NCBI GenBank assembly: GCA_038087875.1
Contig: CM075979.1
Coordinates: forward strand, 45,694,001-45,758,000
Origin: Malacoraja senta
Lineage: Eukaryota
DNA length: 64,000 nt
Reading direction: 5' to 3'
The first letter of the stretch is position 1; every line of letters begins with the position of its first letter. Below, piece after piece: positions 6,033-38,231 of this stretch. Both the position numbers and the translations under genes were made by a program. Under the pieces are notes generated by a model that was given only the letters and a program-made list of their open reading frames with translations, was not told where the DNA came from and did not search any database.

Positions 6033-6162
6033 ATGGTGGCGGGGCAGGGCGCTGGCTGCGGCCGGACGAGGACTGTCTTGGGGCTGAGGGGCTGCTGCGT
6101 CTCTTCGGGAACCCGGCTACCGACCCTGTTACTGGCGCTGGCGTGGCTGCTACCCGCGGCAG
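6033..6162 (+). CDS. NCR3LG1: Exon 1, signal peptide (MVAG...RLPTLLLALAWLLPAA)
   Basis: ATG 6033 in a CpG-rich region; hydrophobic LLLALAWLL core ending PAA; donor G|GTA at 6162/6163 in phase 1; the split codon G+AT gives Asp at the start of the V exon. Confidence 0.8.
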
Positions 6163-6784
6163 GTANNNNNNNNNNNNNNNNNNNNNNNNNNNNNNNNNNN
6201 NNNNNNNNNNNNNNNNNNNNNNNNNNNNNNNNNNNNNNNNNNNNNNNNNNNNNNNNNNNNNNNNNNNNNNNNNNNNNNNNNNNNNNNNNNNNNNNNNNNN
6301 NNNNNNNNNNNNNNNNNNNNNNNNNNNNNNNNNNNNNNNNCTGCAAGTTGTACTTTCCAATCAACCATAAAAAGTCGATGGCATCTGCTTATCCTTTGCA
6401 ATGCTGACAATGGGCTGGCCCTTTGCAGAGTGCAGTCCTTGCAGTTTCAAATGTGACCAATGAAGCTCAAAGAGCCCGCCCAAAAACGGTGTCCATGAAA
6501 AGTCTTGCGGGTTATATAATGTAATGTAATCATCGTTTGATTGTTTTTTTGCTAAGTAGATATATTTGGTGAAGGAGTGGAGATATTTTAGACGTGTGAA
6601 AGAATACTAAAGAACTAAGAACTACTAAAACAGGGCGATCTGTCACATGAGTTACTCCAGCATTTTGCGTCTGTTTTCCACCTAGTTGACAGACACTGGC
6701 CTAAACTGGTCCTCCTGTAGAAACACGGAATTGCAGATGCTGCTTTACCGAGGAAAGACACAGAGTGCTTGAGTACATAGATAC

Positions 6785-8936
6785 AGATACATAGACAACA
6801 GGTGCAGGAGTAGGCCATTCGTGCCTTCAAGCCAGCACCGCCATTCAATGTGATCATGGCTGATCATCCACAATCAGTACCCCGTTCATGCCTTCTCCCA
6901 TGTCCCCTGATTCCGCCAGCCCTAAGAGCTCTATCTAACTCTCTTTTGAATGCATCCAGTGAATCGGCCTCCACTCCACTGCCTTCTGAGGCAAAGAATT
7001 CCACAAATTCACAACTCTCTGGGTGAAAAGGTTTTCCGCATCTCAGTTCTAAATGGCCTACCCCCATATTCTTAAACTGTGGCCCCTGGTTCTGGACTCC
7101 CCCAACATCGAGAACATGTTTCCTGCATCTAGTGTGTCCAATCCCATAATAATTTTATATGTTTCTATAACATACCCCTCTCATCCTTCTAAATTCCAGT
7201 GAGTACAAGCCCAGTCCGCTCCATTCTTTCATCATAAGTCAGTCACGCCATCATAAGTCAGTTAACGTCGTGAACCTATGTTGCACTCCCCTCAATAGCA
7301 AGAAAGTCGTTCCTCAAATTAGGAGACCAAAACTGCACACAATACTCCAGGTGTGGTCTCTCCAGGACCCCCGACTGGGAGTCAGGAGACAGCAAACTAG
7401 CGATTACTTAAAGAAGTAGCCCCAGAAATAGTGGATGCATTAGTGATAATTTTTCAAAACTCTTTAGATTCTGGAGTAGTTCCTGAGGATTGGAGGGTAG
7501 CAAACGTAACCCCACTTTTTAAAAATGGAGGGAGAGAGAAAATGGGGAATTACAGACCAGTTAGTCTAACATCGGTAGTGGGGAAACTGCTAGAATCAGT
7601 TATTAAAGATGGGATAGCAGCACATTTGGAAAGTGGTGAAATCATTGGACAAAGTCAGCATGGATTTATGAAAGGTAAATCATGTCTGACGAATCTTATA
7701 GAATTTTTCGAGGATGTAACTAGTAGAGTGGATAAGGGAGAACTAGTGGATGTGTTATATCTGGACTTTCAGAAGGCTTTCGACAAGGTCCCACATAAGA
7801 GATTAGTATGCAAACTTAAAGCACACGATATTGGGGGTTCAGTATTGATGTGGATAGAGAACTGGCTGGCAGACAGGAAACAAAGAGTAGGAGTAAACGG
7901 GTTCCTTTTCACAATGGCAGGCAGTGACTGGTGGGGTACCGCAAGGCTCAGTGCTGGGACCCCAGCTGTTTATGATATATATTAATGATTTGGACGAGGG
8001 AATTGAATGCAACATCTCCAAATTTGCGGATGACACGAAGCTGGGGGGCAGTGTTAGCTGTGAGGAGGATGCTCGGTAGGCTGCAAGGTGACTTGGACAG
8101 GCTGGGTGAGTGGGCAAATGCATGGCAGATGCAGTATAAATGTGGATAAATGTGAGGTTATCCACTTTGGTGGCAAAAACAGGAAAGTAGACTATTATCT
8201 GAATGGTGGCTGATTAGGAAAAGGGGAGATGCAACGAGCCCTGGGTGTCATGGTACACCAGTCATTAAAAGTAGGCATGCAGGTGCAGCAGGCAGTGAAG
8301 AAGGCAAATGGTATGTTAGCATTCATAGCAAAACGATTTGAGTATAGGAGCAGGGAGGTTCGACTGCAGTTGTACAGGGTCTTGTTGAGACCACACTTGG
8401 AGTATTGCGTACAGTTTTGGTCTCCTAATCTGAGGAAAGACATTCTTGCCATAGAGGGAGTACAGAGAAGGTTCACCAGACTGATTCCTGGGGATGGCAG
8501 GACTTTCATATGAAGAAAGACTGGATAGACTCGGTTTTGTACTCGCTAGAATTTAGAAGATTGCGGGGGGATCTTATAGAAACGTACAAAATTCTTAAGG
8601 GGTTGGACAGGCTAGATGCAGGAAGATTGTTCCACAATGTTGGGGGAAGTCCAGAACAAGGGGTCACAGTTTAAGGATAAGGGGGAAATCTTTTAGGACC
8701 GAGATGAGGAAAACATTTTTCACACAGAGAGTGGTGAATCTGTGGAATTCTCTGCCACAGAAGGTAGTTGAGGCCAGTTCATTGGCTATATTTAAGAGGG
8801 AGTTGGATGTGGGCCCCTTGTGGCTAAAGGGATCAGGGGGTATGGAGAGAAAGCAGGTACAGGATACTGAGTTGGATGATCAGCCATCATCATATTGAAT
8901 GGCGGTGCAGGCTCGAAGGGCCGAATGGCCTACTCC
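6785..8936. mobile_element. CR1 fragments: minus-strand 3' piece (about 6785-7370) and plus-strand RT region (about 7396-8936)
   Basis: NYRPVSLTSVVGKL, QHGF.KGKSCLTNL, LDFQKAFDKV and FADDTK motifs; frameshifted. Confidence 0.9.
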
Positions 8937-9136
8937 NNNNNNNNNNNNNNNNNNNNNNNNNNNNNNNNNNNNNNNNNNNNNNNNNNNNNNNNNNNNNNNN
9001 NNNNNNNNNNNNNNNNNNNNNNNNNNNNNNNNNNNNNNNNNNNNNNNNNNNNNNNNNNNNNNNNNNNNNNNNNNNNNNNNNNNNNNNNNNNNNNNNNNNN
9101 NNNNNNNNNNNNNNNNNNNNNNNNNNNNNNNNNNNN
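8937..9136. other. Assembly gap (200 N, probably unsized); other gaps at 6166-6340 and 53499-53766
   Basis: Runs of N seen directly. Confidence 0.97.
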
Positions 9137-9162
9137 ACTTCATGTTTTTGATTTCCATTTAG

Positions 9163-9501
9163 ATTCGTTGGATATGAACATTTTTGCCAGTCCGAAGAAA
9201 GTATTTTTGAAGGATTCGGTTTTGTTGGAATGTAAATTTTCTGGGTTTAAAGCACCGCTTGACTTGTCAAATGTAGGTGTGCGGTGGTTGTTCGGACCAC
9301 ACCAGGAAGAAATCTATGTTTTTCAAAAGGGAGAACATAGGCCCAAGAAACCTGGCATAGAAATATCCGACATTAAACTATCCGAAGGAGATGCTTCACT
9401 TCTGCTTCATAATGTCCAATTGGAAAATGAAGGGAATTATACTTGCATTGTGTTTGTCACTCCTGAAAAGGCAGAAAAGAGTTCGGAACTGCGAGTTTTA
9501 G
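9163..9501 (+). CDS. NCR3LG1: IgV-set exon of B7-H6-like protein
   Basis: Acceptor tttccatttag|AT, donor TTA G|GTAAA. LLECKF...PLDLSNVGVRW...GDASLLLHNVQLENEGNYTCIVFVTPEKAE parallels human B7-H6 as I recall it (PLNITSMGITW...[30 protein letters not shown]). Confidence 0.92.
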
Positions 9502-10314
9502 GTAAAAGACCATCAACATTACCCGGGGTGATCTGCACTGTTATTACTGGATCTTGGTGGTAAAAATGGGTTTCACCAATTGGCCTTCAACTACCAGCGT
9601 ATTGAATATAGAAGTTTGGAGGTCATGTTGCAGTTATATAAGACGTTGGTGAGGCTGTATTTAGAGTATTGTGTTCAGTTCTGGGCACCATGCTGTAGGG
9701 AAGATGTTGTCAAGCTGGAAAGGGTACAGAGAAGATTTACGAGGATGTTGCCAGGATTCGAGGGTCTGGGCTACAGGGAGAGGTTGAGCAGCCTGGGACT
9801 TTATTCTTGCGGCACAGGAGGATGAGGGGTGATCTTATGGAGGTGTATAAAGTTATGAGAGGAATAGATCGGGTAGACACACAGAGTCTCTTGCCCAGAG
9901 TAGGGCGATCGAGCACCAGAGGGCATATGATTTAAGGTGAATTGGCCCTCTGTAAATCACCTCTAGTGTGTCGAGAGTGGATGAGAAAGAAAGGATAACA
10001 GAACTAGTGTGAACGGGTGATTGATGGTTGACGTGGATTTAATGGACGTAGGGCCGATTTCAATGCTGATTCTCAAATAAAATTGCAAATGCAAAACTGT
10101 ATAAAGAGTGACCACGTCAAAAGTATTTTAGTGTTCTCATTAATATATGCTACATATACTTAGCTGAATAATGTGGCAATCTAAATCTGCATGTCGTCAA
10201 AGGCACTAAATTATAGGAAAGGAATGGTTGGCATGGACTCGATGGGCTGAAGGGCCTGTTTCCAAGCAGTATTAATCAATCAATCAAAAATCAACATTAA
10301 TTGACTTTTATAAC

Positions 10315-11326
10315 CATATAACAATTACAGCACGGAAACAGGCCATCTCGGCCCTTCTAGTCCGTGCCGAACACTTACTCTCACCTAGTCCCATCTACCT
10401 GCACTCAGACCATAACCCTCCATTCCTTTCCGTCCATATACCTATCCAATTTATTTTTAAATGATAAAATTGAACCTGCCTCCACCACTTCCACTGGAAA
10501 CTCATTCCACACAGCTACCACTCTCTGAGTAAAGAAGTTCCCCCTCATGTTACCCCTAATCTTCTGTCCCTTAATTCTCAAATCATGTCCTCTTGTTTGA
10601 ATCTTCCCTACTCTCAATGGAAAAAGCTTATCCACGTCAACTCTGTCTATCCCTCTCATAATTTTAAAGACCTCTATCAAGTCCCCCCTTAACCTTCTGC
10701 GCTCCAAAGAATAAAGACCTAACTTGTTCAACCTTTCTCTGTAACTTAGGTGCTGAAACCCAGGCAACATTCTAGTAAATCTCCTCTGTACTCTCTCTAT
10801 TTTGTTGACATCTTTCCTATAATTTGGCGACCAATATTGTACACCATACTCCAGAGTTGGCCTCACCAATGCCTTGTACAATTTTAACATTACATCCCAA
10901 ATTTTATACTCAACGCTCTGATTTATAAAGGCCAGCACACCAAAAGCTCTCTTTACCACCCTATCTACATGAGATTCCACCTTCAGGGAACTATGCACAG
11001 TTATTCCTAGATCCCTCTGTTCAACTGCATTTCTCAATGCGCTACCGTTTACCATGTACATCCTATTTTGATTTGTCCTGCCAAGATGTAGCACCTCACA
11101 CTTATCAGCATTAAACTCCATCTGCCATCTTTCAGCCCACTCTTCCAAATGGCGTAAATCTCTCTGTAGACTTTGAAAATCTACTTCATTATCCACAACA
11201 CCACCTATCTTATTATCATCTGCATACTTACCAATCCAATTTATCACACCATCATCAAGATCATTGATGTACATGACAAACAACAGTGGACCCAACACAG
11301 ATCCCTGAGGCACCCCACTAGTCACC
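10315..11326 (-). mobile_element. 5'-truncated CR1 LINE (RT C-terminal half)
   Basis: ORF 10405-11325: [14 protein letters not shown]...YADDNK...LEYGVQYWSP. Confidence 0.9.
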
Positions 11327-12003
11327 GGGTAAGGGAAATCTATTTTTATTAGGGCAAGGGTTGAAGGAAGGAAAGTGGTCCATTTTGTATTAGCCCATCA
11401 ATAGGTTAATATAGGACATAGGTTTAAGGGGAGAGGGGAAATATTTAATAGGAACAAGAGGAGCAACTTTTTCACAGAGAAGGTGGTGAGTGTATGGAAC
11501 AAGCTGCCTAACGAGGTAGTTGAGGCAGGTACTATAACAACATTTAAAAGACATTTGTACATGGATAGGAAAGGTTTAGAGTGTTATGGTCCAACACGGG
11601 CAGGTGGGATTGGGACAGCACAGTGGCACATCTGGTAGAGTTGCTGCCTCACAATGCAGGAGACCCAGGTTCAATCCTGACCATGGGTGCTGTCTGTATG
11701 GGGTTGTACGTTCTCCCTGTGACCACGTGGGTTTTCTCCAGGTGCTCCGGTTTCCTCCCACACTCCAAAGGTGTACAAGTTTATAAGTTAATTGACTTCT
11801 GCAAAACAAAATTGTAAATTGTCCATAGAGTAGGATCGTGCTAGTGCACAGGGCGATCGCTGTTTGGTGCGGACTCGTTGGGCTGAAGGGACAGTTTCCA
11901 CGCTGCATGTCTAAAGTCTAAACTAGTGTAGATGGGGCACTTTGGTCATTGTGGGCAAATTGGGCTGAAGGGTCTGCTTCTGTGCTGTATGCTGTGACCC
12001 TTA

Positions 12004-12779: not shown

Positions 12780-13100
12780 TTCAGCCGAAGCTGCATTTAT
12801 CCACAGAACATGTTACCATTGAGACTGGTGCGGAGAAGCTGGTGATGTGTGATGCTACAGGATTTTACCCTCAGACACATAACATCTACTGGGGAAAAGT
12901 ATCCAAGGATAAGACTGAGAAACTAAGGCACGATGTCTTCATCACACCTCTAGTTCTTAATCTGGATAAAACCTTTAATGTCTCCATTAGAATGAGAATT
13001 AAACCAACTCTAGTTGATAATGGCAATGTGTACAAGTGTGTCGTGGAGCACCAATCATATAATGACGCACTCTCGCTCGAGTTGAAACTCACAGTCAAAG
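12780..13100 (+). CDS. NCR3LG1: Extracellular IgC1-set exon of B7-H6-like protein
   Basis: Acceptor ttaatacag|TT, donor AAA G|GTATG. VQPKLHL...MCDATGFYP...W...NLDKTFNVS...DNGNVYKCVVEHQS matches the B7-H6 C1 pattern (MCESSGFYP...NMDGTFNVT...DPGTVYQCVVRH). Confidence 0.92.
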
Positions 13101-16457: not shown

Positions 16458-16571
16458 AACCTGTGGAATATTCGTCAACAGGGGCTATTGTTGGAGTTGT
16501 ATTTGCTGTAATTATTATATTGCCACTACTTGCCTTTGGACTCTATATGTTCATCGTGAAATACAGACCAG
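16458..16571 (+). CDS. NCR3LG1: Transmembrane exon (EPVEYSSTGAIVGVVFAVIIILPLLAFGLYMFIVKYRP)
   Basis: Acceptor ttacattccag|AA, donor CCA G|GTAAT; about 26 uncharged residues followed by basic KYR; 114 nt, phase 1-1. Confidence 0.88.
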
Positions 16572-17122
16572 GTAATATGACAAATGGAGAACGTTCCTCA
16601 ATGCGTTGTAATTGTCTGCCTCGAGTTATAGCAGCTACAGCACGGAAACAGGCCATTCAGCCCACCACATCCTCGCCGACCATCGGGCACTCGTATACAT
16701 AAATATCATTTCATTCAGCCCACTTTCCCATGAGCTCGTACCTGATCCTACCACATTCCTCACACACAAGCGGAAAGTTACAGGGCACAATTAACCTAAC
16801 TTTTTGGGGTGCAGGAGGAAACCAAAACACCCAACATGGGGAACGTGCAAACTCCACATAGACAACATATGAGGTTAGCATTGAACCCCGCCTGTGTGCT
16901 GTGTAAAGTACTGGAGTTGTGTGGCTTTTGTGATTCTTTGATTGCTTGTTACATTTCCCCAACATGGAGGGCTGGTGATCTATTAGTTTCAACCACAGAT
17001 GACCCTGTGATGATTGTATACCCATATAGACAGGCAGCCAGGCTTGGAGCTTCTCTTTGAATGGCCTTCTGGGCATAACTTGTTTCAGTTATAATTTTAG
17101 AGATACAGTGTGGAAACAGGCC

Positions 17123-18258
17123 CTTAAAGCACACGGTATTGGGGGTTCAGTATTGATGTGGATAGAGAACTGGCTGGCAGACAGGAAGCAAAGAGTAGGA
17201 GTAAACGGGTCCTTTTCACAATGGCAGGCAGTGACTAGTGGGGTACCGCAAGGCTCGGTGCTGGGACCCCAGCTATTTACAATATATATTAATGATTTGG
17301 ACGAGGGAATTGAATGCAACATCTCCAGGTTTGCAGATGACACGAAGCTAGGGGGCAGTGTTAGCTGTGAGGAGGATGCTAGGAGACTGCAAGGTGACTT
17401 GGATAGGTTGGGTGAGTGGGCAAATGCATGGCAGATGCAGTATAATGTGGATAAATGTGCGGTTATCCACTTTGGTGGCAAAAACAGGAAAGTAGACTAT
17501 TATCTGAATGGTGGCCGATTAGGAAATGGGGAGATGCAACGGGACCTGGGTGTCATGGTACACCAGTCATTGAAAGTAGGCATGCAGGTGCAGCAGGCAG
17601 TGAAGAAAGCGAATGGTATGTTAGCATTCATAGCAAAAGGATTTGAGTATAGGAGCAGGGAGGTTCTACTGCAGTTGTACAGGGTCTTGGTGAGACCACA
17701 CCTGGATTATTGCGTACAGTTTTGGTCTCCTAATCTGAGGAAAGACATTCTTGCCATAGAGGGAGTACAGAGAAGGTTCACCAGACTGATTCCTGGGATG
17801 GCAGGACTTTCATATGAAGAAAGACTGGATAGACTCGGCTTTTACTCGCTAGAATTTAGAAGATTGAGGGGGGATCTTATAGAAACTTACAAATTTCTTA
17901 AGGGTTTGGACAGGCTAGATGTAGGAAGATTGTTCCTGATGTTGGGGAAGTCCAAAACAAGGGGCCACAGTTTAAGGATAAGGGGGAAGTCTTTTAGGAC
18001 CGAGATGAGAAAAAAAAAATTTCACAAAGAGAGTGGTGAATCTCTGGAATTCTCTGCCACAGAAGGTAGTTGAGGCCAGTTCATTGGCTATATTTAAGAG
18101 GGATTTAGATGTGGCCCTTGTGGCTAAGGGGATCAGGGGGTATGGAGAGAAGGCAGGTATGGGATACTGAGTTGGATGATCAGCCATGATCATATGGAAT
18201 GGCGGTGCAGGCTCGAAGGGCCGAATGGCCTACTCCACCTATTTTCGATGTTTCTATG
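17123..18258 (+). mobile_element. 5'-truncated CR1 LINE
   Basis: RT motifs in ORF 17057-18073 ([14 protein letters not shown]) and TTTCTATG-type tail. Confidence 0.9.
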
Positions 18259-18907: not shown

Positions 18908-19339
18908 TTCGTCCAGAGATCACTGGCCCCAATGGACATCAAACCATGAAACATCTTGAAAAAAAAAAGGCCACTTGGAGGGTTAGTCCATTCCGACCTT
19001 GTGAAATTATAATTCACTTATACCTAAAGAGGAAGGGGGATCAGGTGAGAAGTACAATTTTAGATTGGGACAGCAGAAAATTTCTTGAAAACAGAAATGG
19101 AATGATCAACGGAGAGGGTCGCAATGAAGCGTGGATTCTTATGAATTCAAATTGGGTCGATGCATCTTTTACACCTTTGGATCCCGAATATAACATTAAT
19201 GCAGATGGGATTGTGACGATCAATGTGGAAATATATCCAGATGTTAACAAGGATGCAGGGGCTGAATTAACCATTGAAGTTCAACATACATCACTGAAAC
19301 AGCCGATATCAAAGACTTTGTTACTGGATGTTATAGGAG
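18908..19339 (+). CDS. NCR3LG1: First post-TM exon: degenerate IgC1-type domain without canonical cysteines
   Basis: Acceptor tgttttgactag|TT, donor GGA G|GTAAA; open frame VRPEITGP...ATWRVSPFRP...NADGIVTINVEIYPDVNKDAGAELTIEVQHTSLKQPISKTLLLDVIG keeps C1 spacing (xxRP start, FxP, NxDG, VxHxSL). Confidence 0.8.
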
Positions 19340-20557: not shown

Positions 20558-20935
20558 TGCCACCCAAGGTTTTAAACATCTTCAAACCCTCTTGCATCAT
20601 TCACAATAAATCTGCATCTTTGTTCTGTTCAATCACTGGGTTTAAACCGAGACCTTTACGTATCACGTGGCAACGAAAGAGAAAGAACATGGAGGCAGAA
20701 GAAATAGTTCGAATGGAGGAGGACAACAGGACAATTATTTCCGGTGGTGACGGGGAGATGTCCACATATAAACATTACATCAGTGAGATGAAGCACGATG
20801 ATGAATCCTACAGCATCACTAGTGTACTAGAGATAGTGCCTGATATACAGCAAGATCAAGGCTCACTTTACACCTGTAAAGTACATCACAACGGCACCAA
20901 TGACCAGGAGAGAGAAATCAAGTTAATGATTGCAG
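20558..20935 (+). CDS. NCR3LG1: Second post-TM exon: IgC1-set domain with both cysteines
   Basis: Acceptor ttttctcaaag|TG, donor GCA G|GTATA; VPPKV...LFCSITGFKPRPLRITW...DESYSITSVL...YTCKVHH. Confidence 0.87.
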
Positions 20936-22679
20936 GTATATAATACTTCCATCTAAGCCTTGCATTGACAGAGGATGCAGAGTGCGTACTTATTTGGAAT
21001 GGTGTCTTAAATATCATACCACAACCATTAATGTACGCAGAGCGTTTGAAGGCTCTGGGTCTGTGCTAGCTGGAGTTTAGAAGGACGAGGGGGGAATCTC
21101 AATGAAACCTACTGAATAATGAAAGGCCTGGATAGACTGGATGTAAAAAAGATGTTTCTACTAATGTGAGAGTCCAGGACCAGACTCGGAGTAAAAGGAT
21201 GTACCTTTAGAATGGAGATGAGGAGTAATTCCTTTCGTCAGAGGTTGGTGACTCGGTGGAATTCATTGCTACAGACATCTGTGGAAACCAAGTCATTGGG
21301 TTTTTCACAGCGGAGATTTATAGGTTGTTGATTAGTAAGAGTGTGAAAGGTTATGGGGAGAAGGCAGGAGAATGGGGTTGAGAGGGAAAAATAGATGGCA
21401 AAGTAGACTAGATGGGCCGAATGGCCTAATTGTGGTCCTATAACTTATGAACGTATAAATTATCTAATGATATAGAACGAAGAACGGTACGGCACAACCG
21501 CTCGACCCACAATGCCTGCACATAAACCATATCCCTCCATATCCATGTGCCTATCCAAAAGTCTATTAAATGCCACTATCCTTTCTGCCTCAACCACCAT
21601 CCCCGGTAACGCGTTCCAGACACTCACCCCCATCTATATTAAAAAAATTGACCCACACATCTTCTTTAAAATTTGCCCTCTCACCTTAAAACTATGGCCT
21701 CTAGTATTTGATTGTTCTATCCTTTTTTTCTCCGGACAGAGGCTCTGACTGTCTACCCTATCTATGCCTCTCCTGATTTTATGTACCTCATTCAGGCCTC
21801 AGACCTTTTTGACCACCCGATCTACCTGCGATTCCACCTTCAAGGAACCTTGCACCTGAACTCCTAGATCCCTCTGCTCCACAACACTCCCCAGAGCCCT
21901 ACCATTTACTGTGTTGGTCCTGCCCATGTTAGACTTCCCAAAATGCAACATCTTACATTCTCTGTATTAAATTCCATCAACCATTCCTCAGCCCACCTGG
22001 CCAATCGATCCAGATCCTGCTGCAATTCTTCACAACAATCTTCACTAACTGCAAAACCACCCATTTTTTTAACCTTATGTTTCTGCCGACAAGTATAGAT
22101 CCCTTAATTTATTTTCTTGCATTAACCTTAGAACTATATTCTGCACTCTGTATCTTCCCCTTTGTTCTATTTATTGTATTTGAATTTGACTTGATTGTGT
22201 TTGTGCCTGGTACATCTGATCTGGTGGGATTGCCTGCAAAACAAAGCTTTTCACTGTACCTGTACATGTGACAATAATACACCTGAACCTAAACCACGTG
22301 GTTTTACTGCAGTAAGATCTTCTGCTATGAGCCACAGGCGCAGATGCTGAATTATTTCAATTTATATTCCCTGGGTTGACAGAGAGACATTTGTCCAGTG
22401 TGAATAGCCCAGTTCATTCTGAATTCTAGTAAACATTAGGCTTGTAGCAGGGACGGGGTCAGAGGGAATTTGATGTCTAGAATGATGTATTTAACTAAAT
22501 AACAGTTGTACGTAACTTGTCCTGCAGCAACATGCAGATCTTTAGTCAGGTTAAGGCTTCTCTTAGAGTCATAGAACCATAGAGTGATACAGTGTGGAAA
22601 TAGGCCCTTCGGCCCAATTTGCCCACACTGGCCCACATGTCCCAGCTACACTAGTCCCACCTGCCAACATTTGGTCCAT

Positions 22680-23763: not shown

Positions 23764-26700
23764 TTACTCAGAACTGCTGTAGATTTGGGAGCAACAGCAG
23801 CAGGAGATTAGCAAGAGATACGACTGATTGGCTCTAGCCCGAGTGGGAGGAGAGAAGTGAGTCAGTGCCGGAAAACAGTTGAAAACTGAGGAATTTTGTT
23901 TGTAAATTGGTAAATCAGGCAATTTATCCGTCAATTTAAGCAATATGGCTCTTAGCGAGCGGCAGTGAGGGAGCGGCCTTGTGAGGGAAGTGCGAGTCTT
24001 TGGCTCGAGAGTCTTCGGTGAGGAGACCACGCAATACGCTTGAGAGGTAGAGACGAAAGAAGGAGATGTCAGGCAAGCTGATTCAGTGCGATGCTTGCGG
24101 TATGTGGGAGGTCAAGGACACTGCTGGTGCCTCTGGCTGCTACATATGCGAGAAGTGCATCCAGGTAGAGCTCCTGAAGGGCCGTGTTGGGGAACTGGAG
24201 AAGCAAGTGGATGACCTCAGGTTCGTCCAAGAAACTGAGTCGTTCCTCGACAAGTCCTACAGTAAGATTGTTTACACCTAAGGTACTGGAATAGAGAAGG
24301 TGGGTGACGGTGAGAAAGGGAGGGAAACATGGAATGCAAACGTCCCTGGGTGTTGTACCTCTTGTGAACAGGTTCGCCCACTTAGAAACTGTCGGGACAG
24401 AAGACGTTATCACACTGAGCGGCGGACTGGCTTGCAATGCGAATAGGGCTGTTGAGCCAAAACCAAAATGGCCTAAGGCAGGCAACGCCATTGTAGTGGG
24501 AGACTCCATTGTGAGAGGTACGGACAGGGGTTTCTGCGGGAACAGACGGGATTCGAGGATGGTGTGCTGCCTTCCTGGTGCCAGGATCCAGGATGTCACG
24601 GACAGAGTGCAGAAAATCCTCAAGGGCGAAGGTGAACAGCCGGAAGTGGTAGTGCATGTCGGCACAAACGATGTCGGAAAGAAGGGGATGAATATTCTGC
24701 AGCGTGACTTTAGAGAGCTCGGAAAAATGCTGAAAAGCAGGACCTCCAGGGTTGTTATCTCCGGTTTGCTTCCAGTTCCTCGTGCTGGCGAGAGCAGGAA
24801 CAGGGAGATACGGGACCTGAACGTGTGGCTGAGGAACTGGGGCACGGGGCAGGGATTTAGATTCTTAGATCACTGGGATCTGTTTTAGGGTAAGGGGGGA
24901 ACTGTGCAAAAGGGACGGATTGCATCTTAACATGTGTGGGACCAGCATTCTGGCAGGCAGGTTTGCCACTGCTACACGGGTGGTTTTAAACTGAATAAGG
25001 GGGGTGGGGTGTCGAATGGGATAGTGGAGGATGGAGTTAAAGGGAAAGGGTTTCTTAAATGTGTGAGCGTAGAGACAGAGGGGTGTAAAATGAGGGTAGA
25101 AGCAATAGGTAGCAAGATGAAAAGTAAAAGTGGCAGGCAGACAAAACCAGGGCAAAAATCAAAAAGGGCCACTTTTCAACATAATTGTATAAGGGGTAAG
25201 AGTGTTGTAAAAACAAGCCTGAAGGCTTGGTGTCTCAATGCAAGGAGCATTCGTAATAAGGTGGATGAGTTGAATGTGCAGATAGCTATTAATGACTATG
25301 ATATAGTTGGGATCATGGAGACATGGCTCCAGGGTGACCAAGGCTGGGAGCTGAACATCCAGGGATATTCAATATTCAGGAGGGATAGACAGAAAGGAAA
25401 AGGAGGCGGGGTAGCGTTGCTGGTTAGAGAGGAGATTAACACAATAGAAAGGAAGGACATTAGCTTGGAGGATCTGGAATCGATATGGGTAGAGCTGCGA
25501 AGCACTAAGGGGCAGAAAACGCTGGTGGGTGTTGTGTACAGGCCACCTAACAGTAGTGAAGTTGGAGATGGTATCAAACAGGAAATTAGAAATGCGTGCA
25601 ACAAAGGTAAAACAGTTATAATGGGTGACTTCAATCTACATATAGATTGGGTGAATCAAATTGGCAGGGGTGCTGAGCAAGAGGATTTCTTGGAATGTAT
25701 GCGGGATAGTTATCTAAATCAACATGTAAAGGAACCAACGAGAGAGCAGGCTATTTTAGACTGGGTATTGAGTAATGAGGAAGGGTTAGTTAGCAGTCTT
25801 GTTGTACGTGCCCCCTTGGGCAAGAGTGACCATAATATGGTTGAGTTCTTAATTAGGATGGAGAGTGACATTGTTAATTCAGAAACAATGGTTCTGAACT
25901 TAAAGAAAGGTAACTTTGAGGGTATGAGACGTGAATTGGCCAAGATTGACTGGCAATTAATTCTAAAAGGGTTGACGGTGGACATGCAATGGAAGACATT
26001 TAAAGACTGCATGGATGAACTACAAAAATTGTTCATCCCAGTTTGGCAAAAGAATAAATCAGGGAAGGTAGTGCATCCGTGGATAACAAGGGAAATCAGG
26101 GATGGTATCAAAGCGAAGGATGATGCGTACAAGTTAGCCAGAAAAAGCAGCATACCGGAGGACTGGGAGAAATTCAGAGACCAGCAGAGGAGGACAAAGG
26201 GCTTAATTAGGAAAGGAAAAATAGATTATGAAAGAAAACTGGCAGGGAACATAAAAACTGACTGCAAAAGTTTTTATAGATATGTAAAAAGAAAGAGATT
26301 AGTTAAAACAAATGTAGGTTCCTTGCAGTCAGAAACAGGTGAGTTGATCATGGGAACAAGGATAAAAATAATCTGCCGGAAATAGCAGGGGACCGCGGGT
26401 CAAAGGAGTTGGAGGAATTGAGTGAAATCCAGGTTAGTCGGGAAGTGGTTTTGGGTAAATTGAATGGATTAAAGGCCGATAAATCCCCAGGGCCAGATAG
26501 GCTGCATCCCAGAGTACTTAAGGAAGTAGCTCCAGAAATAGTGGATGCATTAGTAATAATCTTTCAAAACTCTTTAGATTCTGGAGTAGTTCCTGAGGAT
26601 TGGCGGGTAGCAAACGTAACCCCACTTTTTAAGAAGGGAGGGAGAGAGAAAACGGGGAATTACAGACCAGTTAGTCTAACATCGGTAGTGGGAAAACTGC

Positions 26701-28073
26701 TAGAGTCAGTTATTAAAGATGGGATAGCAGCACATTTGGAAAGTGGTGAAATCATTGGACAAAGTCAGCATGGATTTACGAAAGGTAAATCATGTCTGAC
26801 GAATCTTATAGAATTTTTCGAGGATGTAACTAGTAGCGTGGATAGGGGAGAACCAGTGGATGTGGTGTATCTGGACTTCCAGAAGGCTTTCGACAAGGTC
26901 CCACATAAGAGATTAGTATACAAACTTAAAGCACATGGCATTGGGGGTTCAGTATTGATGTGGATAGAGAACTGGCTGGCAAACAGGAAGCAAAGAGTAG
27001 GAGTAAACGGGTACTTTTCACAATGGCAGGCAGTGACTAGTGGGGTACCGCAAGGCTCAGTGCTGGGACCCCAGCTATTTACAATATATATTAATGATCT
27101 GGATGAGGGAATTGAAGGCAATTTCTCCAAGTTTGCGGATGACACTAAGCTGGGGGGCAGTGTTAGCTGTGAGGAGGATGCTAGGAGACTGCAAGGTGAC
27201 TTGGAGAGGCTGGGTGAGTGGGCAAATGTTTGGCAGATGCAGTATAATGTGGATAAATGTGAGGTTATCCATTTTGGTGGCAAAAACAGGAAAGCAGACT
27301 ATTATCTAAATGGTGGCCGACTAGGAAAAGGGGACATGCAGCGAGACCTGGGTGTCATGGTACACCAGTCATTGAAAGTAGGCATGCAGGTGCAGCAGGC
27401 AGTGAAGAAAGCGAATGGTATGTTAGCAAAAGCATTGTGAGTATAGTGAGCAAGGGAGGTTCTACTTGCCAGATTGTACAGGGTCTTGTGGTGAGACCTA
27501 CACCTTGGAGTATTTGCGTACAGTTTTGGTCTCCAAATCTGAGGAAGGACATATTGCCACAGAGGGAGTGCAGAGAAGGTTCACCAGACTGATTCCTGGA
27601 TGTCTGGAATGTCTTATGAAGAAAGACTGGATAGACTTGGTTTATACTCTCTAGAATTTAGGAGATTGAGAGGGGATCTTATAGAAACTTACAAAATTCT
27701 TAAGGGGTTGGACTGGCTAGATGCAGGAAGATTGCTCCCAGTGTTGGGGAAGTCCAGGACAAGGGTCACAGCTTAAGGATTAAGGGGAAATCCTTTAAAA
27801 ACCGAGATGAGAAGAACGTTTTTCACACAGAGAATGGTGAATCTCTGGAACTCTCTGCCACAGAGGGTAGTCGAGGCCAGTTCATTGGCTATATTTAAGA
27901 GGGAGTTAGATGTGGCCCGTGGCTAAAGGGATCAGAGGGTATGGAGAGAAGGCAGGTACGGGATACTGAGTTGGATGATCAGCCATGATCATATTGAATG
28001 GTGGTGCAGGCTCGAAGGGCCGAATGGCCTACTCCTGCACCTAATTTCTATGTTTCTATGTTTCTATGTTTCT
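23764..28073 (+). mobile_element. Near full-length CR1 LINE (ORF1 zinc finger plus SGNH esterase; ORF2 APE plus RT), mildly decayed
   Basis: ORF1 CDACGMW...CEKC, GDSIVRG, VHVGTND (24066-24888); ORF2 CLNARSIRNK, MGDFN, SDHN, RT (about 25160-27970); (TTTCTATG)n tail; AAT target duplication at 23761-23763 and 28074-28076. Confidence 0.93.
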
Positions 28074-32200: not shown

Positions 32201-32229
32201 TCGGTTGAAAGATTCTAGGGGGAAAAAGA

Positions 32230-34590
32230 GGTGACATTGGCTGACAAGGACAGCATAAAACTAAAAGCGAAGGCGTATAACGTTGCAAAGATTCATGCAA
32301 AGCCCGGGGATTGGGAAGCTTTTCAGGGACCACAGATGGTAACAAAGAATGCAGTATGGGGAGAAAAGATGAAATACAAAGGTAAGCTAGCCAATAATAT
32401 TAAACAGGATAACAAGAGTTTCTTCCGTTCTATAGAGAGTAAGAAAGAGGCAAGAGTGGACGTTGGACCGCTGGAGAATAATGCCGGTGAAGTGATAATC
32501 GGGAATATAGAAATGGCCGAGTAGTTGAACAACTTTTTGCATCAGTCTTTAGAGTGGAAGACACCAGCAACATGCCTGAAATTCAAGAGAGTCAGGGGGT
32601 GGAAGTTAGTGGAGTGGTTATTACTGGGGAGAATGTGCTTGGAAAGCTGAAAGGGCTGAAGGTGGATAAGTCACCTGGGCCGATGGACTGCACCCTAGGG
32701 ATCTGAAAGATGTGGCTTTGGAGATTCTGGGGGCATTGATAGTGATATTTCAAGAATCACTAGAGACTGGAGTGGTTCCAGATTATTGGAAAATTGCCAA
32801 TATTACCCCGCTGCACAAGAAGGGAGCAAAGCCATGGGCGGAAATGCTGGGGGGGGGATGGGGGGGGGCCACGCCCCCCTCGTGCTTTTTGAGGTGGGGG
32901 ACAATCCCCCCCATGTTTTGTAATCCGGACTTAATCAGACGCTTTCTAAGGGCTGAATCGGCCCGTTCGTGGGGCCTTTCAGCGCCCGGCGCAACTTAAA
33001 ATCAAACTGGTGCATCGAGGCGATCGAGGCTCCTGATGTTGAAGCCCCCGCCGGCCGATGAAAGCCCCCGTGAACAGGCCGATTCAAGCCCCACGATTCG
33101 GGGCGGACGCAGCTGCTGTTGCTGGAGTTTGGAGTCGGTCACCAACCAGGTCAGCTCCCGATGTTACCGTCCACAGGGCTCACGGCCGAAGCCTCACGTA
33201 TGAGCGTGCGTGCGTGTGTGTGTGCGCGCTTGCACGCGCGCGACCGCCAAGAAATTGTGTCCCCCGCATGTTTTGATTGCGATTTCCGTGCCTGGGAGCA
33301 GAATATTGGGAACTATAGGCCGGTTAGTCTGACTTTGGTGGTTGCTTAAATTTTAGAATCCATTCTAAAGGATGAGGTTATGGAGAACTTGGCTGAAGTC
33401 AGCATGGCTTAGTGAAGGGAAGATCTTGCCTGACAAATTTGCTGGAATTCTTTGAAGAAGCAAATAGCAGGACAGACAAAAGAGAGTCAGTCGACGTTGT
33501 TTACCTAGATTTTCAGAAAGCCTTTGATAAGGAGCCTCTCAGGAAGATGTTATCAAAGGGCAGATACTAGCATGTGTAGCAGGTTGGCTGGATAGCAGAA
33601 GACAAAGGGAGGCAATAAAGATTGCGGATGATATAAAAGTAGGTGGAAGGGCAGATAATATAGAGAAAGCAGGGACTCTGCAGAAGGACTTTGAAAGGCT
33701 GGGAGAGTGGGCAGAGAAGTGGCAGATGGAATATAGTGTAGCAAAGTTAGGAGTCAAGCATTTTGGTAGTAGGAATAAAGGCATAGACTATTTTCTAAAT
33801 GGGAAAAGAATCCATAAATCAGAGGTGCAAAGGGACTTGGGAGCTGGTGCAGGAGTCCCAAAAGGTTTATCTGCAACTCGAATCGTTAGTAAAGAAAGCA
33901 AACGCAATACTAGCATTTATTTTGAGGGTGCTTGTATACAAAAACAGGGATGTATTGCTGAAGCTCTATAAGGCACTGGTAAGGCCACATTTAGAATATT
34001 GTGATCAATATGGGCACCATATCTGAGGATGTGCTGGCTCTAGAGAGGGTCCAGAGGAGGTTTACAAGAATGATCCCAGGAATGAGTAGGTTAACCTATG
34101 ATGAGTGTTTGACGGCACTGGGCCTGTACTCCATGGAGTTTAGAGGAATGAGTGGGGACCTCATTGAAACATACAGAATAGTGAAAGGCTTGGATAGAGT
34201 GGATGTGGAGAGCATGTTTCCCCTAGTGGGAGAGTCTAGAATAGTAAGATTAAACGAGAACTTACCAGTGCTGGACGGGTTCTTCACGTAGTCACTCATG
34301 TGACTCCGAAGTAAAACTAGAATTCATAGCCTCAGAATTAAAGGATGTTCTTTTAGGAAGGAAATGAGGAGAAATTTCTTTAGTCCGAGGGTGGTGAATG
34401 TGTGGAATTCCAAGTTAGTGGATATTTTTAAGGCAGAGATAGATAGATTCATGATTAGTACAGGTGTCAGAGGTTATGGGGAGAAGGCCGGAGAATGGAG
34501 TTGGGATGGAGTGATAGATCAGCCATGCTTGAATGGCAGAGGGGACTTGATGGGCCAATGGCCTAATTCAACTACTACCACATGACCTTA
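32230..34590 (+). mobile_element. Decayed CR1 of another subfamily, interrupted by a MITE
   Basis: VVPDYWKIANITPL, NYRPVSLT, QHG..KG.SCLTNL and LYKALVRPHLEYC motifs. Confidence 0.85.
32832..33295. mobile_element. Possible hAT-type MITE
   Basis: Imperfect 14-bp TIRs (CCATGGGCGGAAAT / ATTTCCGTGCCTGG) and degenerate 8-bp flanks gagcaaag / gagcagaa; splits the CR1 RT frame. Confidence 0.45.
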
Positions 34591-37005
34591 TGACCTCATG
34601 ACTAGCAGGGATGGAAACAGGAAATTTGATGTCTAAAGTGATGTATTTAACTAAATAACAGCTGTACGTAACTTTTTCAGCAGCAACATCCAGATCTTTA
34701 GTCAGGTTAAGGCTTCTCTTTTGTGCTCTCAAAATGTTGGTGGAAATCTACAAAAGTTTGAGTCCTGTGATCCAGCTTCTCGGAATGTGTTGTGATACCT
34801 TATCTCAGGCAGTGTTGGCATCATTACATGTGAGACACCTTGTGTTTTAATACAACGATCTGGAAAATCAAAATGCAGGAAAACAGGAAGGTAATGCTTT
34901 TGCTGAAACATAGAACAAAGAACAGTACAGCACAGGAACAGGCCCTTCAGCCCACAATGTCTGTGCTGAACATGATGCCAAGACCATCACTTAGCTACCT
35001 GCACATAACCCATTTCCCTCCATTCCCAGCATAACCATGTGTAAATCCAAAGGCCTCTTAAACGTCACTATCGTATCTGCCTCCACCACCACCCCGGGCA
35101 GCAAGTCCCAGTCACCCACCATCCACGGTGTATAAACCCTGCCCCACACATCTCTTTTAAACCCTGCCCCTCTCATCTTAAAGCTGTGGCCTCGTATTTG
35201 ATGTTTTCCATGCTGGGAAAAGGCCTCTGACTGTCCACTCTATTTATGCCTCTATTAATTTTATATACTTCTATCAAAGATGTTGGATTTTCAGTGTGGA
35301 ACTCCACACATTCAAGTTCAATGGTTGCTCTTTGTGTGATCTACTCTTTTAAATCTTGTTTTTCTTCCTGTAGGTATAGAACTATATTCTGCACTCTGTA
35401 TCTTCCCCTTTGTTCTATCTATTGTACTTGAGTGTGACGGTTGTATTTATGGCTGGTACACCTGATCTGGTGGGATTGCTGCAAAACAAAGCTTTTCCCT
35501 GTACCTCAGTACATGTGACAATAATAAACCTGAACCTAAACCACGTGATTTTACTAGAATAAGATCTTCTGCCATGAGACACAAGCGCACTTGCTGAATT
35601 GTTTCAATCTATATTCCCTGGGTTGACAGAGAGACATTTTGTCCAGTGTGAATAGCCCAGAATTGTTCATTTTGAAGTCTAGTAAACATTTGGTTTGTAG
35701 CAGGGACGGGATAGTCACAGAGTGATACAGTATGGAGACAGGCTCTTCCGCCCAACTTGCACACACTGGCCAACATGTCCCAGCTACACTAGTCACACCT
35801 GCATGCGTTTGATCCATATCGCTCCAAACCTGTCCAATCCATGTACCTGTCTAACTGTTTCTTAAACGTTTTATAGTCCCAGCCTCAACTACCTCATCTG
35901 GCAGCTTGTTCCATACATCCACCACCCTTTGTGTGACAATGTTACACCTGTGATTCCTAATAAATCGTTTTCCCTTCACCTTAAACCTATGTCCTCTGAT
36001 CCTCGATTCACCTACTTCTGGCAAGAGACTCTGTGCATCTACCCAATCTATTCCCCTCATGATTGTATACACCTTTATAAGATCATCCCTCACCCTCCTG
36101 CTCTCTAAGGAATTGTATATACTTCAGTCTGTCCCAGCCTACTCAACCTTTCCCTGTCATTCAGACCCTCTAGTCCTAGCAACATCCTTGTAAAACCTTG
36201 TCTGCACCCTTTCCAGCTTGACAACATCTTTCCTATGACACAGTGACCAGAACTGAACACAATACTCTAAATGCGGCCTCACCTATGTGACCACTTTATC
36301 TACCTGTGACTCCACCTTCAAGGAACCATGCGCCTGCACTCCTAGATCCGTCTGCTCTACAAGCTGCACCAGGGGCCTACCATTCACTGTAGATCCTGCC
36401 TATGTTAGACTTCCCAAAATGCAACACCTCACATTTCTCTGTATTAAATTCCATCAACCATTCATCAGCCCACCTGGCCAATCGAACAAGATCCTGCTGC
36501 AATTTTTCACAACCATCTTCACTATCTGCAAAACCACCCACTTTTGTATCATCTGCAAACTTGCTAATCTTGCCCTGTATATTCTCATCCAAATCATTGA
36601 TGTAGATGACAAACAGTAACGGGCCCAGCATCGAACCCTGAGGCATACCACTAGTCACAGGCCTCCAGTCCAAGAAGCAACCCTCCACAATCACCCTCTG
36701 CTTCCTTCCATGCAGCCATGTAGATTTGTCTACCTTCATACATGAAAGTATCTTCATCAGGATCAGAGGAAATTATATGTCTAGAGAGATGTATTTAACT
36801 AAATAACAGTTGTATGACCTTTTGCAGCAGCAACATGCAGATCTTTAGTCAGGTTAAGGCTTCTCTTTTGTGCTCTTAAAATGTTGGTGGGGAACTACAA
36901 AAGTTCGAGACCTGTGATCCAGCTTCTCGGAATGTGTTGGGATACCTTATCTCAGGCAGTGTTGGCATCATTACATGTGAGACTCCTTCTTGTGTTTTAA
37001 TACAG

Positions 37006-37079
37006 CGCCGGATACAGATGTCACCACAGGAAGTCCCGATGAGGAGGATAAATAAATCAAAGTGCAGTAAAACAGGAAG
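37006..37079 (+). CDS. Candidate mini-exon (APDTDVTTGSPDEEDK*), 74 nt, one base short of frame-preserving
   Basis: Acceptor tcttgtgttttaatacag|CG, donor GAA G|GTAATG. TAA at 37053; one extra A in the run at 37050-37052 would open the frame (KINQSAVKQE) into the terminal exon. Confidence 0.5.
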
Positions 37080-38091
37080 GTAATGCTTTTGCTGAAACAT
37101 AGAACATAGAACAATACAGCACAGGAACAGGCCCTTCAGCCCACAATGTCTGTGCTGAACATGATGCCGACCATCACTTATCTACCTGCACATAACCCAT
37201 ATCCCTCCATTCCCAGCAAATCCATGTTTCTATCCAAAAGCCTCTTAAACGCCAGTCCCTCACCGCCCCTGGCAGTATGTTCCGGACATTCACTTCCTTC
37301 TGTGTAAAAAATAACTTGTTCCACACATCTCCATTAATCTTTGCATTTCTCACCTTAAGCTATGGCCTCTAGTGTTTGATTTCTCCATTCTGGGAAAAAG
37401 ATTCCTACAATCTTCCTGTTCATACCTCTCATAATTATACATACCTTGCTACACAATCTCCAGCAATCCAGAAATAAACAATCCAAGTCTGTCCAACCAC
37501 TCCCTGTAGCTAATACCCTCAAATCCAAGCATCATTCTGGCAAACCTCTTCTGCACCCTTCACACCATTCCTGCCATGGGTCGACCAGAACTGCACACAA
37601 GACTCCAAATGGGGCCTGACCAAAGTCATGTAAAGCTGCATCATGACTTCCTGACTCTTGTACTCAATGCCCCATGGAATCATTGAAATATGAATGTGAT
37701 TTGATTGCCTGTCGTGGATTGTACGTTTAACTGATGGGCCTGTTTCCGCGCTGTATCTCTGAAGTTTAAAGTTCAAAGATAATCTCTCCAACACTGAAAT
37801 AATGCAGTGATGACAAAGATAATTAATACAAGCGTTATATTTGCTTATTTAAAAAGTTAGCATTTTAAATACAGGATTTCTCATCGCAGCAAGCAGATGA
37901 TAGGACTTATCCTGCTTAAATTAGAATGTAAAACTTAAAACAGTACAGCATAGGAACAGGCCCTTTGGCCCACTATGTCCGTGCTAGACATAGTTCCGAC
38001 ATGAATTCTGTGAATCATATGTACAATAATTTTGACGCTGTTTATATTTGCTTGTTTCCATTTCTAAGCTCTTTCCTTTGTGTTAATTCAG

Positions 38092-38231
38092 CATCAAATC
38101 CAACGGGAATACAAGTGGAAGCAAAAGACAGCAAAGCAGAAAATAATTTTAAATCACAGTATCAGGAAGAGAAAGGGGAAAAAGAATCGGAAAATGACTT
38201 TTACACTGAGAAAAAAGAAGAAAATAATTGA
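38092..38231 (+). CDS. NCR3LG1: Terminal coding exon, acidic/lysine-rich tail (ASNPTGIQVEAK...ENDFYTEKKEENN*)
   Basis: Acceptor ctttgtgttaattcag|CA is phase 1 and in frame with upstream exons; open to TGA 38229-38231; conserved in the paralogous segment at 1248. Confidence 0.7.

What the first reader, a model, noticed from the sequence alone, without database searches (positions are those of the whole stretch)
6033..38231. B7-H6-like receptor-ligand gene with two Ig C1-type domains predicted on the cytoplasmic side (V-C1-TM-C1-C1-tail)
Seen: a signal peptide, V, C1 and an uncharged TM with basic KYR behind it are followed, through in-frame phase-1 splice sites, by two more C1-type exons and an acidic tail; no second signal peptide or TM was found. 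Known: human B7-H6 (ligand of NKp30) has V-C1-TM and a Gag-related cytoplasmic tail, and Ig domains are rarely cytoplasmic in surface receptors. Inference: this elasmobranch family uses intracellular Ig-fold modules instead, possibly as a scaffold or signalling platform in an early NK-type ligand system. I cannot verify whether this architecture is already described for non-mammalian B7-H6.
Basis: partly seen in the sequence, partly recalled or inferred. Interest (0 to 1): 0.9.

Follow-up and report, generated by a model that had tools for sequence, protein, structure and literature searches.

The report
Truncated skate B7-H6 gene, Ig tail
This is a shortened tandem copy of the skate version of the immune ligand gene B7-H6, in which antibody-type (Ig) domains follow the membrane anchor; that odd design is real, runs from chimaeras to turtles, and is already in the public record under the B7H6 name.

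Summary
The exon chain is there. Seven + strand exons all join in phase 1 and give 617 aa. Both N gaps lie in intron 1 and break no coding frame.

V-set, C1-set and the TM exon are confirmed. Of the two post-TM exons, 20558-20935 is a clear C1-set domain. Exon 18908-19339 has no Pfam hit but models as an Ig fold with C1-like motifs.

This is not a local oddity. It is a truncated tandem paralogue of a gnathostome-wide B7-H6 (NCR3LG1)-like family built SP-V-C1-TM-(Ig)n. A 1092-aa nurse-shark record named "B7H6" has the same layout.

RNA-derived contigs of a related species join the TM exon to the first post-TM exon, and that exon to the C1 exon. Cytoplasmic placement is inferred from:
- the leader and a single TM with a positive-inside flank;
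- glycosylation sequons enriched only on the ecto side;
- canonical cysteines intact in 91% of pre-TM but 53% of post-TM domains.

TM-exon-skipped (soluble) isoforms are annotated in a stingray and a caecilian, so the Ig chain may also act outside the cell.

The "acidic tail" exon shows no coding constraint. This copy's 3' end and its expression are unverified.

The scan noted this design on other DNA of this genome (s1-140065, s1-140145).

The parts
6033..6162 (+). Leader (signal peptide) exon, phase-1 donor; only GTA is readable before the N gap
   Evidence: The junction to the V exon gives LLPAA|DSLDMNIF, as in A. radiata P0001.
6166..6340 (.). Assembly gap inside intron 1, starting 3 nt after the leader exon
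   Evidence: It does not interrupt coding sequence in the model; its content is unknown.
8937..9136 (.). Assembly gap inside intron 1, ending 26 nt before the V acceptor
9163..9501 (+). V-set Ig exon (ectodomain)
   Evidence: Pfam V-set 4.1e-11; 74% identical to A. radiata
12780..13100 (+). C1-set Ig exon (ectodomain), both canonical cysteines, conserved NVS sequon
   Evidence: Pfam C1-set 1.3e-10; family alignment
16458..16571 (+). Transmembrane exon: acidic stalk EPVEY, about 26 hydrophobic residues, then KYRP; a cassette exon in relatives
   Evidence: Its 3' end is joined to X5 in an RNA contig of a relative. It is skipped in Hemitrygon isoform X6 and Microcaecilia isoform X3.
18908..19339 (+). 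X5: first post-TM Ig-fold exon (143 aa), C1-derived by motif, canonical cysteines lost, long variable insert
   Evidence: No Pfam hit; alignment A3; AF2 pLDDT 85; Foldseek hits all Ig; covered by RNA contigs at 93-94% identity
20558..20935 (+). C1b: second post-TM exon, a bona fide C1-set domain with both cysteines; phase-1 donor
   Evidence: Pfam C1-set 3.4e-13. Profile hits Ig heavy constant, SIRP and UrIg2 C1 domains. RNA contigs join X5 to its first bases. A contig leaves the sequence exactly at 20935.
38092..38231 (+). Putative terminal 'acidic tail' exon; assignment unverified and probably not under coding constraint
   Evidence: Good acceptor. Against it: 5 nonsynonymous and 0 synonymous differences, plus an in-frame stop in the copy at 1250-1384.
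1250..1384 (+). Copy of the tail segment belonging to the preceding tandem unit
53370..53498 (+). Leader exon of the next tandem unit, 97% identical but with a 1-nt insertion that shifts the frame; followed by an N gap

Best explanation
The locus is a truncated tandem paralogue of the skate B7-H6 (NCR3LG1)-like gene family.

In this family one transcript encodes, in order:
- a cleavable leader;
- a B7-H6-type V-C1 ectodomain;
- a single stop-transfer TM with a basic cytosolic flank;
- a chain of C1-set-derived Ig domains, six to eight or more in full-length genes and two here.

When the TM exon is included, ordinary type I insertion puts V-C1 outside the cell and the Ig chain in the cytoplasm. 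When the phase-1 TM cassette exon is skipped, as annotated in two distant species, the whole protein becomes a secreted multi-Ig molecule.

Shown here:
- exon structure;
- domain identities;
- family membership;
- TM->X5 and X5->C1b junctions in RNA of a relative.

Inferred:
- cytoplasmic location;
- any scaffold or signalling role;
- expression and the 3' end of this particular copy.
For: Exons and phases. Pfam.

Family membership:
- The family ectodomain profile hits human B7-H6 first (E 2e-50), ahead of CD276 and TAPBPR.
- The model is colinear with nurse-shark 'B7H6' P0191 over V-C1-TM-X5-C1b, E 3e-137.
- It is 83% identical to A. radiata XP_032894416.
- About 50 of the top 70 cluster representatives have one TM at residue 230-330, followed by 400-1500 aa of Ig domains.
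- Species range from Callorhinchus to frogs and a turtle.

RNA evidence:
- A run X15 contig places ...GTGAAATACAAACCAG, the TM exon's 3' end, directly before X5.
- X13 and X15 contigs continue from 19339 into TGCCACCCAAGG..., the start of C1b.
- Elephant-shark V9K7L7 (P0165) differs from the genome model at several residues and has the same layout.

Topology (68 proteins):
- Net charge is -0.5 before the TM and +2.8 after it.
- Sequons run at 1.30 per 100 aa in the ectodomain (0.76 expected) against 0.67 post-TM (0.57 expected).
- 57 of 68 proteins have the higher density in the ectodomain.
- Both canonical cysteines are present in 81 of 89 pre-TM domains and 187 of 352 post-TM domains.
Against: - No RNA run of the window's own species was available. 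The contigs are 93-96% identical, so they come from a relative or a full-length paralogue. Expression of this copy is therefore untested.
- This copy lacks the D5-to-last Ig exons. Its proposed tail exon evolves neutrally.
- The neighbouring unit's leader is frameshifted, which fits a decaying array.
- TM-skipped isoforms exist in Hemitrygon and Microcaecilia, and a TM-less Scyliorhinus torazame model exists. The Ig chain may therefore be selected for a secreted form.
- D4 and D5 keep both cysteines in all lineages, and some members carry sequons in D4.
- The cysteine and sequon statistics use related sequences, so they are not independent samples.
- Topology was not measured.
Confidence: 0.7

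Rival explanations
1. The Ig chain works outside the cell. The biologically relevant long product is the TM-exon-skipped, secreted V-C1-(Ig)n protein. TM-containing mRNAs either give a membrane form whose tail is incidental or are a minor species.
For: - Exact TM-exon skips are annotated as isoforms in a stingray (P0155) and a caecilian (P0174).
- A TM-less S. torazame model exists.
- All exons are phase 1, so skipping keeps the frame.
- D4 and D5 keep both cysteines everywhere.
- D4 is a textbook C1-set domain, a type otherwise known only extracellularly.
Against: - The RNA contig of the relative contains the TM exon joined to X5.
- The named nurse-shark record and the elephant-shark V9K7L7 include the TM.
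- Most isoforms and about 50 of 70 representatives include it.
- Half of the post-TM domains have lost a canonical cysteine, and sequons there are at chance level. Both are unusual for secreted C1-set chains.
Confidence: 0.25
2. This particular copy is a dead or dying partial duplicate. It would be a pseudogene fragment of the B7-H6 array, and the 617-aa protein is never made.
For: - The D5-to-last exons are absent.
- The 17 kb after C1b is LINE-rich.
- The tail segment shows 5 nonsynonymous and 0 synonymous changes, and its copy carries a stop.
- The next unit's leader is frameshifted, and no V exon was found for that unit in the window.
- No contig at 99% identity or more covers the exons in any RNA run laid.
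Against: - All six upstream exons are open, with intact splice sites and conserved key residues.
- Identity to A. radiata is 83% without stops.
- No RNA run of the same species was available, so absence of expression is not shown.
- Read-through after C1b would still end the ORF cleanly two codons later.
Confidence: 0.35
3. Two separate genes were chained by the reader: a V-C1-TM gene and a downstream Ig gene with its own leader.
For: No same-species transcript was seen. The ORF reads on past the TM donor to a stop at 16700-16702, so a short-tailed form is possible.
Against: - Spliced TM->X5 and X5->C1b junctions are seen in RNA contigs of a relative.
- The order is colinear in a named cDNA-type record and in gene models of more than 20 species.
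- No leader or start lies between 16571 and 18908, which is LINE sequence.
Confidence: 0.03

Closest known systems
[quoted passage not shown]
   Same: Same order: SP, V, C1, TM, X5-type Ig domain, C1-set domain. Colinear with the window model at 42.5% identity over residues 38-572.
   Different: The nurse-shark protein goes on with five more Ig domains, an acidic stretch and a conserved last Ig domain. The window copy stops after two post-TM domains.
Human B7-H6 / NCR3LG1 (PDB 3PV6, 4ZSO, 6YJP)
   Same: V-C1 ectodomain. It is the best solved match to the family profile, E 2e-50 over the whole ectodomain. It is also a type I membrane protein.
   Different: By my own knowledge, the human cytoplasmic tail is a Gag-related sequence with signalling motifs, not Ig domains. 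Here the tail is built of C1-derived Ig domains. NKp30 binding was not tested.
Amblyraja radiata LOC116984368 (XP_032894416, 'uncharacterized protein')
   Same: Closest relative found: 83% identity over V-C1-TM-X5-C1b, with an identical leader/V junction.
   Different: That model has a doubled V-C1 and four further Ig domains, and it spans 115 kb. It probably runs across several tandem units.
UrIg / UrIg2 of elasmobranchs (PMC12227049)
   Same: Non-rearranging genes with a V domain followed by a chain of C1-type domains. The UrIg2 C domains are among the solved matches to D4.
   Different: UrIg and UrIg2 have a VJ-type V and a split leader. Their TM, where present, lies at the C-terminal end, so all Ig domains are extracellular. 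Here the TM sits after the second domain.
Cytoplasmic Ig-domain proteins of muscle (titin, obscurin, MyBP-C)
   Same: Ig folds that work in the reducing cytosol without disulfides. MyBP-C is among the Foldseek matches of X5.
   Different: Those are I-set domains of soluble sarcomeric proteins. They are not C1-set domains attached to a B7-type receptor-ligand ectodomain.

Membership tests
B7-H6 (NCR3LG1) family | Signal peptide followed by one V-set and one C1-set Ig domain | tested here: met
   Pfam V-set 4e-11 and C1-set 1e-10. A leader with a hydrophobic core is present.
B7-H6 (NCR3LG1) family | Ectodomain closer to B7-H6 than to other B7, butyrophilin or tapasin proteins | tested here: met
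   Profile A2 against PDB: B7-H6 2e-50, CD276 8e-41, TAPBPR 1e-24. No phylogenetic tree was made.
B7-H6 (NCR3LG1) family | Single-pass type I transmembrane segment after the C1 domain | tested here: met
   Hydropathy and the basic flank KYR. The flank is conserved in 68 relatives.
B7-H6 (NCR3LG1) family | Homology to a record that specialists named B7H6 in a cartilaginous fish | tested here: met
   BLASTP against P0191: E 3e-137, colinear over residues 38-572.
B7-H6 (NCR3LG1) family | Binds NKp30 (NCR3) | not testable with these tools
   Needs a binding assay. Linkage to, and copy number of, NKp30 genes was not examined.
B7-H6 (NCR3LG1) family | Gag-related cytoplasmic tail (mammalian form) | tested here: not met
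   The post-TM exons are Ig domains. This feature appears to be specific to mammals rather than to the family.
Ig C1-set domain (for exon 18908-19339) | Match to the Pfam C1-set profile and the canonical B-F disulfide | tested here: not met
   No Pfam hit at E<=1. The F-strand Cys is absent in nearly all species, and the B-strand Cys is absent in skates.
Ig C1-set domain (for exon 18908-19339) | Ig beta-sandwich fold with C1-type motifs (GF.P after strand B; V.H..L..P after strand F) | tested here: met
   AF2 pLDDT 85; the top Foldseek hits are all Ig domains; the motifs are visible in alignment A3.
Ig C1-set domain (for exon 20558-20935) | Pfam C1-set match, both cysteines, and similarity to solved C1 domains | tested here: met
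   C1-set 3.4e-13. C23, W37 and C106 are invariant in A4. Matches Ig heavy constant, SIRP and UrIg2 domains.

The most novel reading that the evidence does not exclude
The post-TM chain would be a true cytoplasmic array of C1-set-derived Ig domains, the first case of this 'adaptive-immunity' domain type working in the cytosol. It would be the ancestral state of B7-H6, kept from chimaeras to turtles and replaced in mammals by a Gag-derived tail. A conserved cassette TM exon would switch the same gene between a membrane ligand with an Ig rod inside the cell and a secreted multi-Ig protein.
Probability: 0.45. Interest if true: 0.8.

Novelty: new member of a known kind. Interest (0 to 1): 0.55.

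Why it matters
C1-set Ig domains are regarded as extracellular modules of Ig, TCR, MHC and their relatives. A conserved family that places six or more of them behind a stop-transfer anchor of an NK-ligand-type ectodomain is odd, whichever of two readings holds. Either these domains fold and act in the cytosol, or a TM-cassette splice switch decides on which side of the membrane they end up.

The design is old and widespread. I found no open-access paper that discusses it, and nearly all database entries are labelled 'uncharacterized protein'. The sequence itself is public, though: a nurse-shark record is named B7H6. The gain from this window is therefore a further, truncated member plus comparative evidence on topology. 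It is not a new kind of gene.

Tried and rejected
- **First RNA search** (4.6 kb stretch). The runs mainly held the intronic LINE. Only one 387-nt contig touched C1b. I repeated the search with exon-only stretches.
- **Same-species RNA.** No RNA run of the window's own organism was offered. Organism D holds all the sampled words but looks like DNA.
- **X5 as a protein query** against proteins of 79-250 aa gave nothing. The length filter hides full-length relatives.
- **Second TM or further Ig exons downstream.** The hydrophobic stretch at 22140 lies in a repeat that also occurs at 35377-35710. Sensitive tblastn with the D5-to-end parts of two relatives found no exon.
- **Separate-gene reading.** Rejected on the spliced junctions.
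- **UrIg / UrIg2.** Considered and rejected, because their TM is C-terminal and their V is VJ-type.
- **Tail exon as homologue of the acidic linker of full-length genes.** The match is low-complexity only, and the exon shows no coding constraint.
- **Papers not held.** Flajnik et al. 2012 (Immunogenetics 64:571) and Ohta & Flajnik 2015 could not be read. I cannot say whether the post-TM Ig domains are discussed there.
- **Full-text searches** for cytoplasmic or intracellular Ig domains and for B7H6 in lower vertebrates found no description of this design.
- **Encoding contigs.** The look-up for V9K7L7 found nothing. The A. radiata gene range (115 kb) was too long for its DNA to be returned.
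Full report
**Observation**

The seven + strand exons are:

| Exon | Coordinates |
|---|---|
| Leader | 6033-6162 |
| V | 9163-9501 |
| C1 | 12780-13100 |
| TM | 16458-16571 |
| X5 | 18908-19339 |
| C1b | 20558-20935 |
| Tail | 38092-38231 |

Each has an AG acceptor and a GT donor. All junctions are phase 1, and the spliced ORF is 617 aa.

I checked the two N gaps first. Gap 6166-6340 starts three bases after the leader exon. Gap 8937-9136 ends 26 bases before the V acceptor. Both lie in intron 1, so continuity of frame across them is not at issue. The spliced junction reads LLPAA|DSLDMNIF, exactly as in the closest relative. What the gaps hide cannot be known and was not looked up.

**Domains**

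Pfam gives V-set (4e-11) for exon 2, C1-set (1e-10) for exon 3 and C1-set (3e-13) for exon 6. It gives nothing for the 143-aa exon 5 or for the tail.

Exon 5 nevertheless aligns with the first post-TM domain of 26 relatives. It shares their C1-like motifs, GF(R/K)P after strand B and V.H..L..P after strand F. An AlphaFold model built on that alignment is a beta sandwich with a disordered insert (pLDDT 85). All of its top Foldseek matches are Ig domains. It lacks both canonical cysteines. "Ig-fold, C1-derived" is therefore justified for exon 5, and "C1-set" is not.

A profile of exon 6 hits Ig heavy-chain constant domains, the SIRP C1 domain and UrIg2 C domains. Exon 6 is an ordinary C1-set domain in an unusual place.

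**Locus context**

The leader recurs at 53370 and the tail segment at 1250. Blocks at 893-1668, 2411-4644, 5744-6160 and 6341-7404 match 37731-38508, 48875-51089, 53080-53498 and 53770-54793 at 93-96% identity. The window therefore cuts through a tandem array of units of about 47 kb, heavily invaded by LINEs.

Compared with relatives, this unit lacks every Ig exon beyond C1b.

The tail exon is weak. Against its copy at 1250-1384 it shows five nonsynonymous and no synonymous changes, and that copy has an in-frame TAA. If the C1b donor is not used, the ORF ends two codons later at 20941-20943. The next unit's leader has a one-base insertion that shifts the frame. So this is a shortened copy in a decaying array, and its 3' end is open.

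**The family**

A HMMER scan of 1.84 billion cluster representatives with exon 6 found 339 proteins. The best hits are 600-2200 aa long with five to twelve matched stretches each.

The closest is Amblyraja radiata XP_032894416, 83% identical to the model over V-C1-TM-X5-C1b. The window is therefore from a skate or a close relative.

About 50 of the top 70 representatives have exactly one hydrophobic segment, at residue 230-330, followed by 400-1500 residues of Ig domains. They come from:
- a chimaera;
- sharks, rays and skates;
- reedfish, coelacanth and lungfish;
- a caecilian and many frogs;
- a turtle.

Almost all are labelled "uncharacterized protein". An alignment of twelve species shows a fixed order: SP, V, C1, TM, X5, D4 (this window's C1b), D5, D6, D7, often D8, an acidic stretch, and a well-conserved last Ig domain.

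**Is it B7-H6?**

A profile of the family's ectodomains hits human B7-H6 first in the PDB (3PV6, 4ZSO, 6YJP; E 2e-50 over the whole V-C1). CD276 follows at 8e-41 and TAPBPR at 1e-24.

[quoted passage not shown] It is 1092 aa and has no genome contig behind it, so it is a cDNA-type submission. It has the same SP-V-C1-TM-(Ig)n layout and is colinear with the window model (42.5% identity, E 3e-137).

The design therefore already sits in the public record under the B7H6 name. The paper that most likely goes with it (Flajnik et al. 2012) is not held here. I cannot say whether the post-TM domains are discussed there. No open-access text I could search describes them.

**One transcript or two genes?**

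No RNA run of the window's own organism was available. Runs of a related organism hold exon 6 at about a third of its sampled words.

I laid these runs on exon 5 alone at 85% likeness:
- One X15 contig covers 18912-19081. It is preceded by ...TGTTTACTTCGTGAAATACAAACCAGTTAC, whose GTGAAATACAAACCAG is the 3' end of the TM exon (window: GTGAAATACAGACCAG).
- Contigs of X13 and X15 run from 19339 straight into TGCCACCCAAGGTTTCAAAC, the first bases of C1b.
- The X15 contig extends 378 nt past 19339, the length of the C1b exon.

An earlier X7 contig leaves the genome exactly at 20935. These intron-less junctions can only come from spliced RNA. They carry a 6-nt insertion also implied by the A. radiata protein, so they stem from a relative's or a paralogue's full-length gene rather than from this copy.

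Together with the nurse-shark record and elephant-shark V9K7L7, this rules out the two-gene reading for the family. V9K7L7 differs from the genome model at several residues. By my own knowledge it belongs to the cDNA-derived accession series.

**Topology (inferred)**

A cleavable leader plus one strongly hydrophobic segment gives type I insertion. Across 68 relatives:
- Net charge of the 12 flanking residues is -0.5 before the TM and +2.8 after it.
- N-glycosylation sequons occur at 1.30 per 100 aa in the ectodomain, against 0.76 expected from composition.
- After the TM they occur at 0.67 per 100 aa, against 0.57 expected.
- 57 of the 68 proteins have the higher density outside.
- With an HMM of the family's own C1 domains, both canonical cysteines are present in 81 of 89 pre-TM domains and in 187 of 352 post-TM domains.
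- The pattern of loss is the same from chimaera to frog: X5, D6 and D7 lack the F-strand Cys, and D8 lacks the B-strand Cys.

All of this fits a reducing, glycan-free compartment. The sequences are related, so the P values overstate the case, and nothing was measured.

**The complication**

NCBI isoform X6 of Hemitrygon akajei and isoform X3 of Microcaecilia unicolor are exact deletions of the 38- and 37-aa TM exon. A Scyliorhinus torazame model also lacks the TM.

Because every exon is phase 1, skipping yields a secreted V-C1-(Ig)n protein. The Ig chain could therefore be maintained for an extracellular role, with the TM exon acting as a switch. D4 and D5 keep both cysteines everywhere, which suits that reading. 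The losses elsewhere and the neutral sequon density suit the cytoplasmic one. I put the cytoplasmic-function reading at somewhat under one half, and the soluble-only reading at about a quarter.

**Verdict**

Five corrections follow:
1. Only one of the two post-TM exons is a Pfam C1-set domain.
2. The tail exon is unsupported.
3. The copy is a truncated member of a tandem array, and its expression is untested.
4. The design is gnathostome-wide rather than elasmobranch-specific, and it is already deposited as shark B7H6.
5. A TM-skipping isoform offers a non-cytoplasmic alternative.

The scan's first readers noted the same design twice elsewhere in this genome, with six post-TM domains each (s1-140065 and s1-140145). 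I did not check those loci.

Noticed in passing
window 53370-53498: The leader exon of the next tandem unit has an extra G (ctgttactgGGcgctgg against ctgttactgGcgctgg). This shifts the frame before the N gap. It is either a pseudogene mark or an assembly error.
   Followed up: partly
window 58600-64000: After the LINE in intron 1 of the second unit, no V exon was found by tblastn at the place expected from the first unit. The second unit may lack it, or it may lie beyond the window.
   Followed up: partly
window 24934-27440 and 55212-58508 (also 7431-8936, 10405-11325 minus strand, 17057-18073): Several copies of one LINE family carry endonuclease and reverse-transcriptase ORFs, 90-95% alike. 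They are extremely abundant in the public runs laid, with word depths up to 8e5.
   Followed up: no
window 42633-46270: A different, AT-rich LINE (L1-like ORF2 with endonuclease and RT pieces) is inserted between the tail segment and the next leader. It is absent from the corresponding spacer at 1668-2411.
   Followed up: no
window 19086-19153 (run X15): One RNA contig follows exon X5 up to 19153 and then continues with unrelated letters (ATGTCAACTTGCACC...). This could be an alternative donor inside the variable insert, a paralogue, or a chimeric contig.
   Followed up: no
Amblyraja radiata LOC116984368 (P0001, P0152): The gene model spans 115 kb and carries a doubled V-C1 before the TM. That suggests transcripts or models that run across several tandem units of the array.
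   Followed up: partly
window 16572-16702: If the TM donor is not used, the ORF reads on for 44 codons to a stop at 16700-16702. That would give a conventional short-tailed V-C1-TM protein. No evidence was found for or against this.
   Followed up: no
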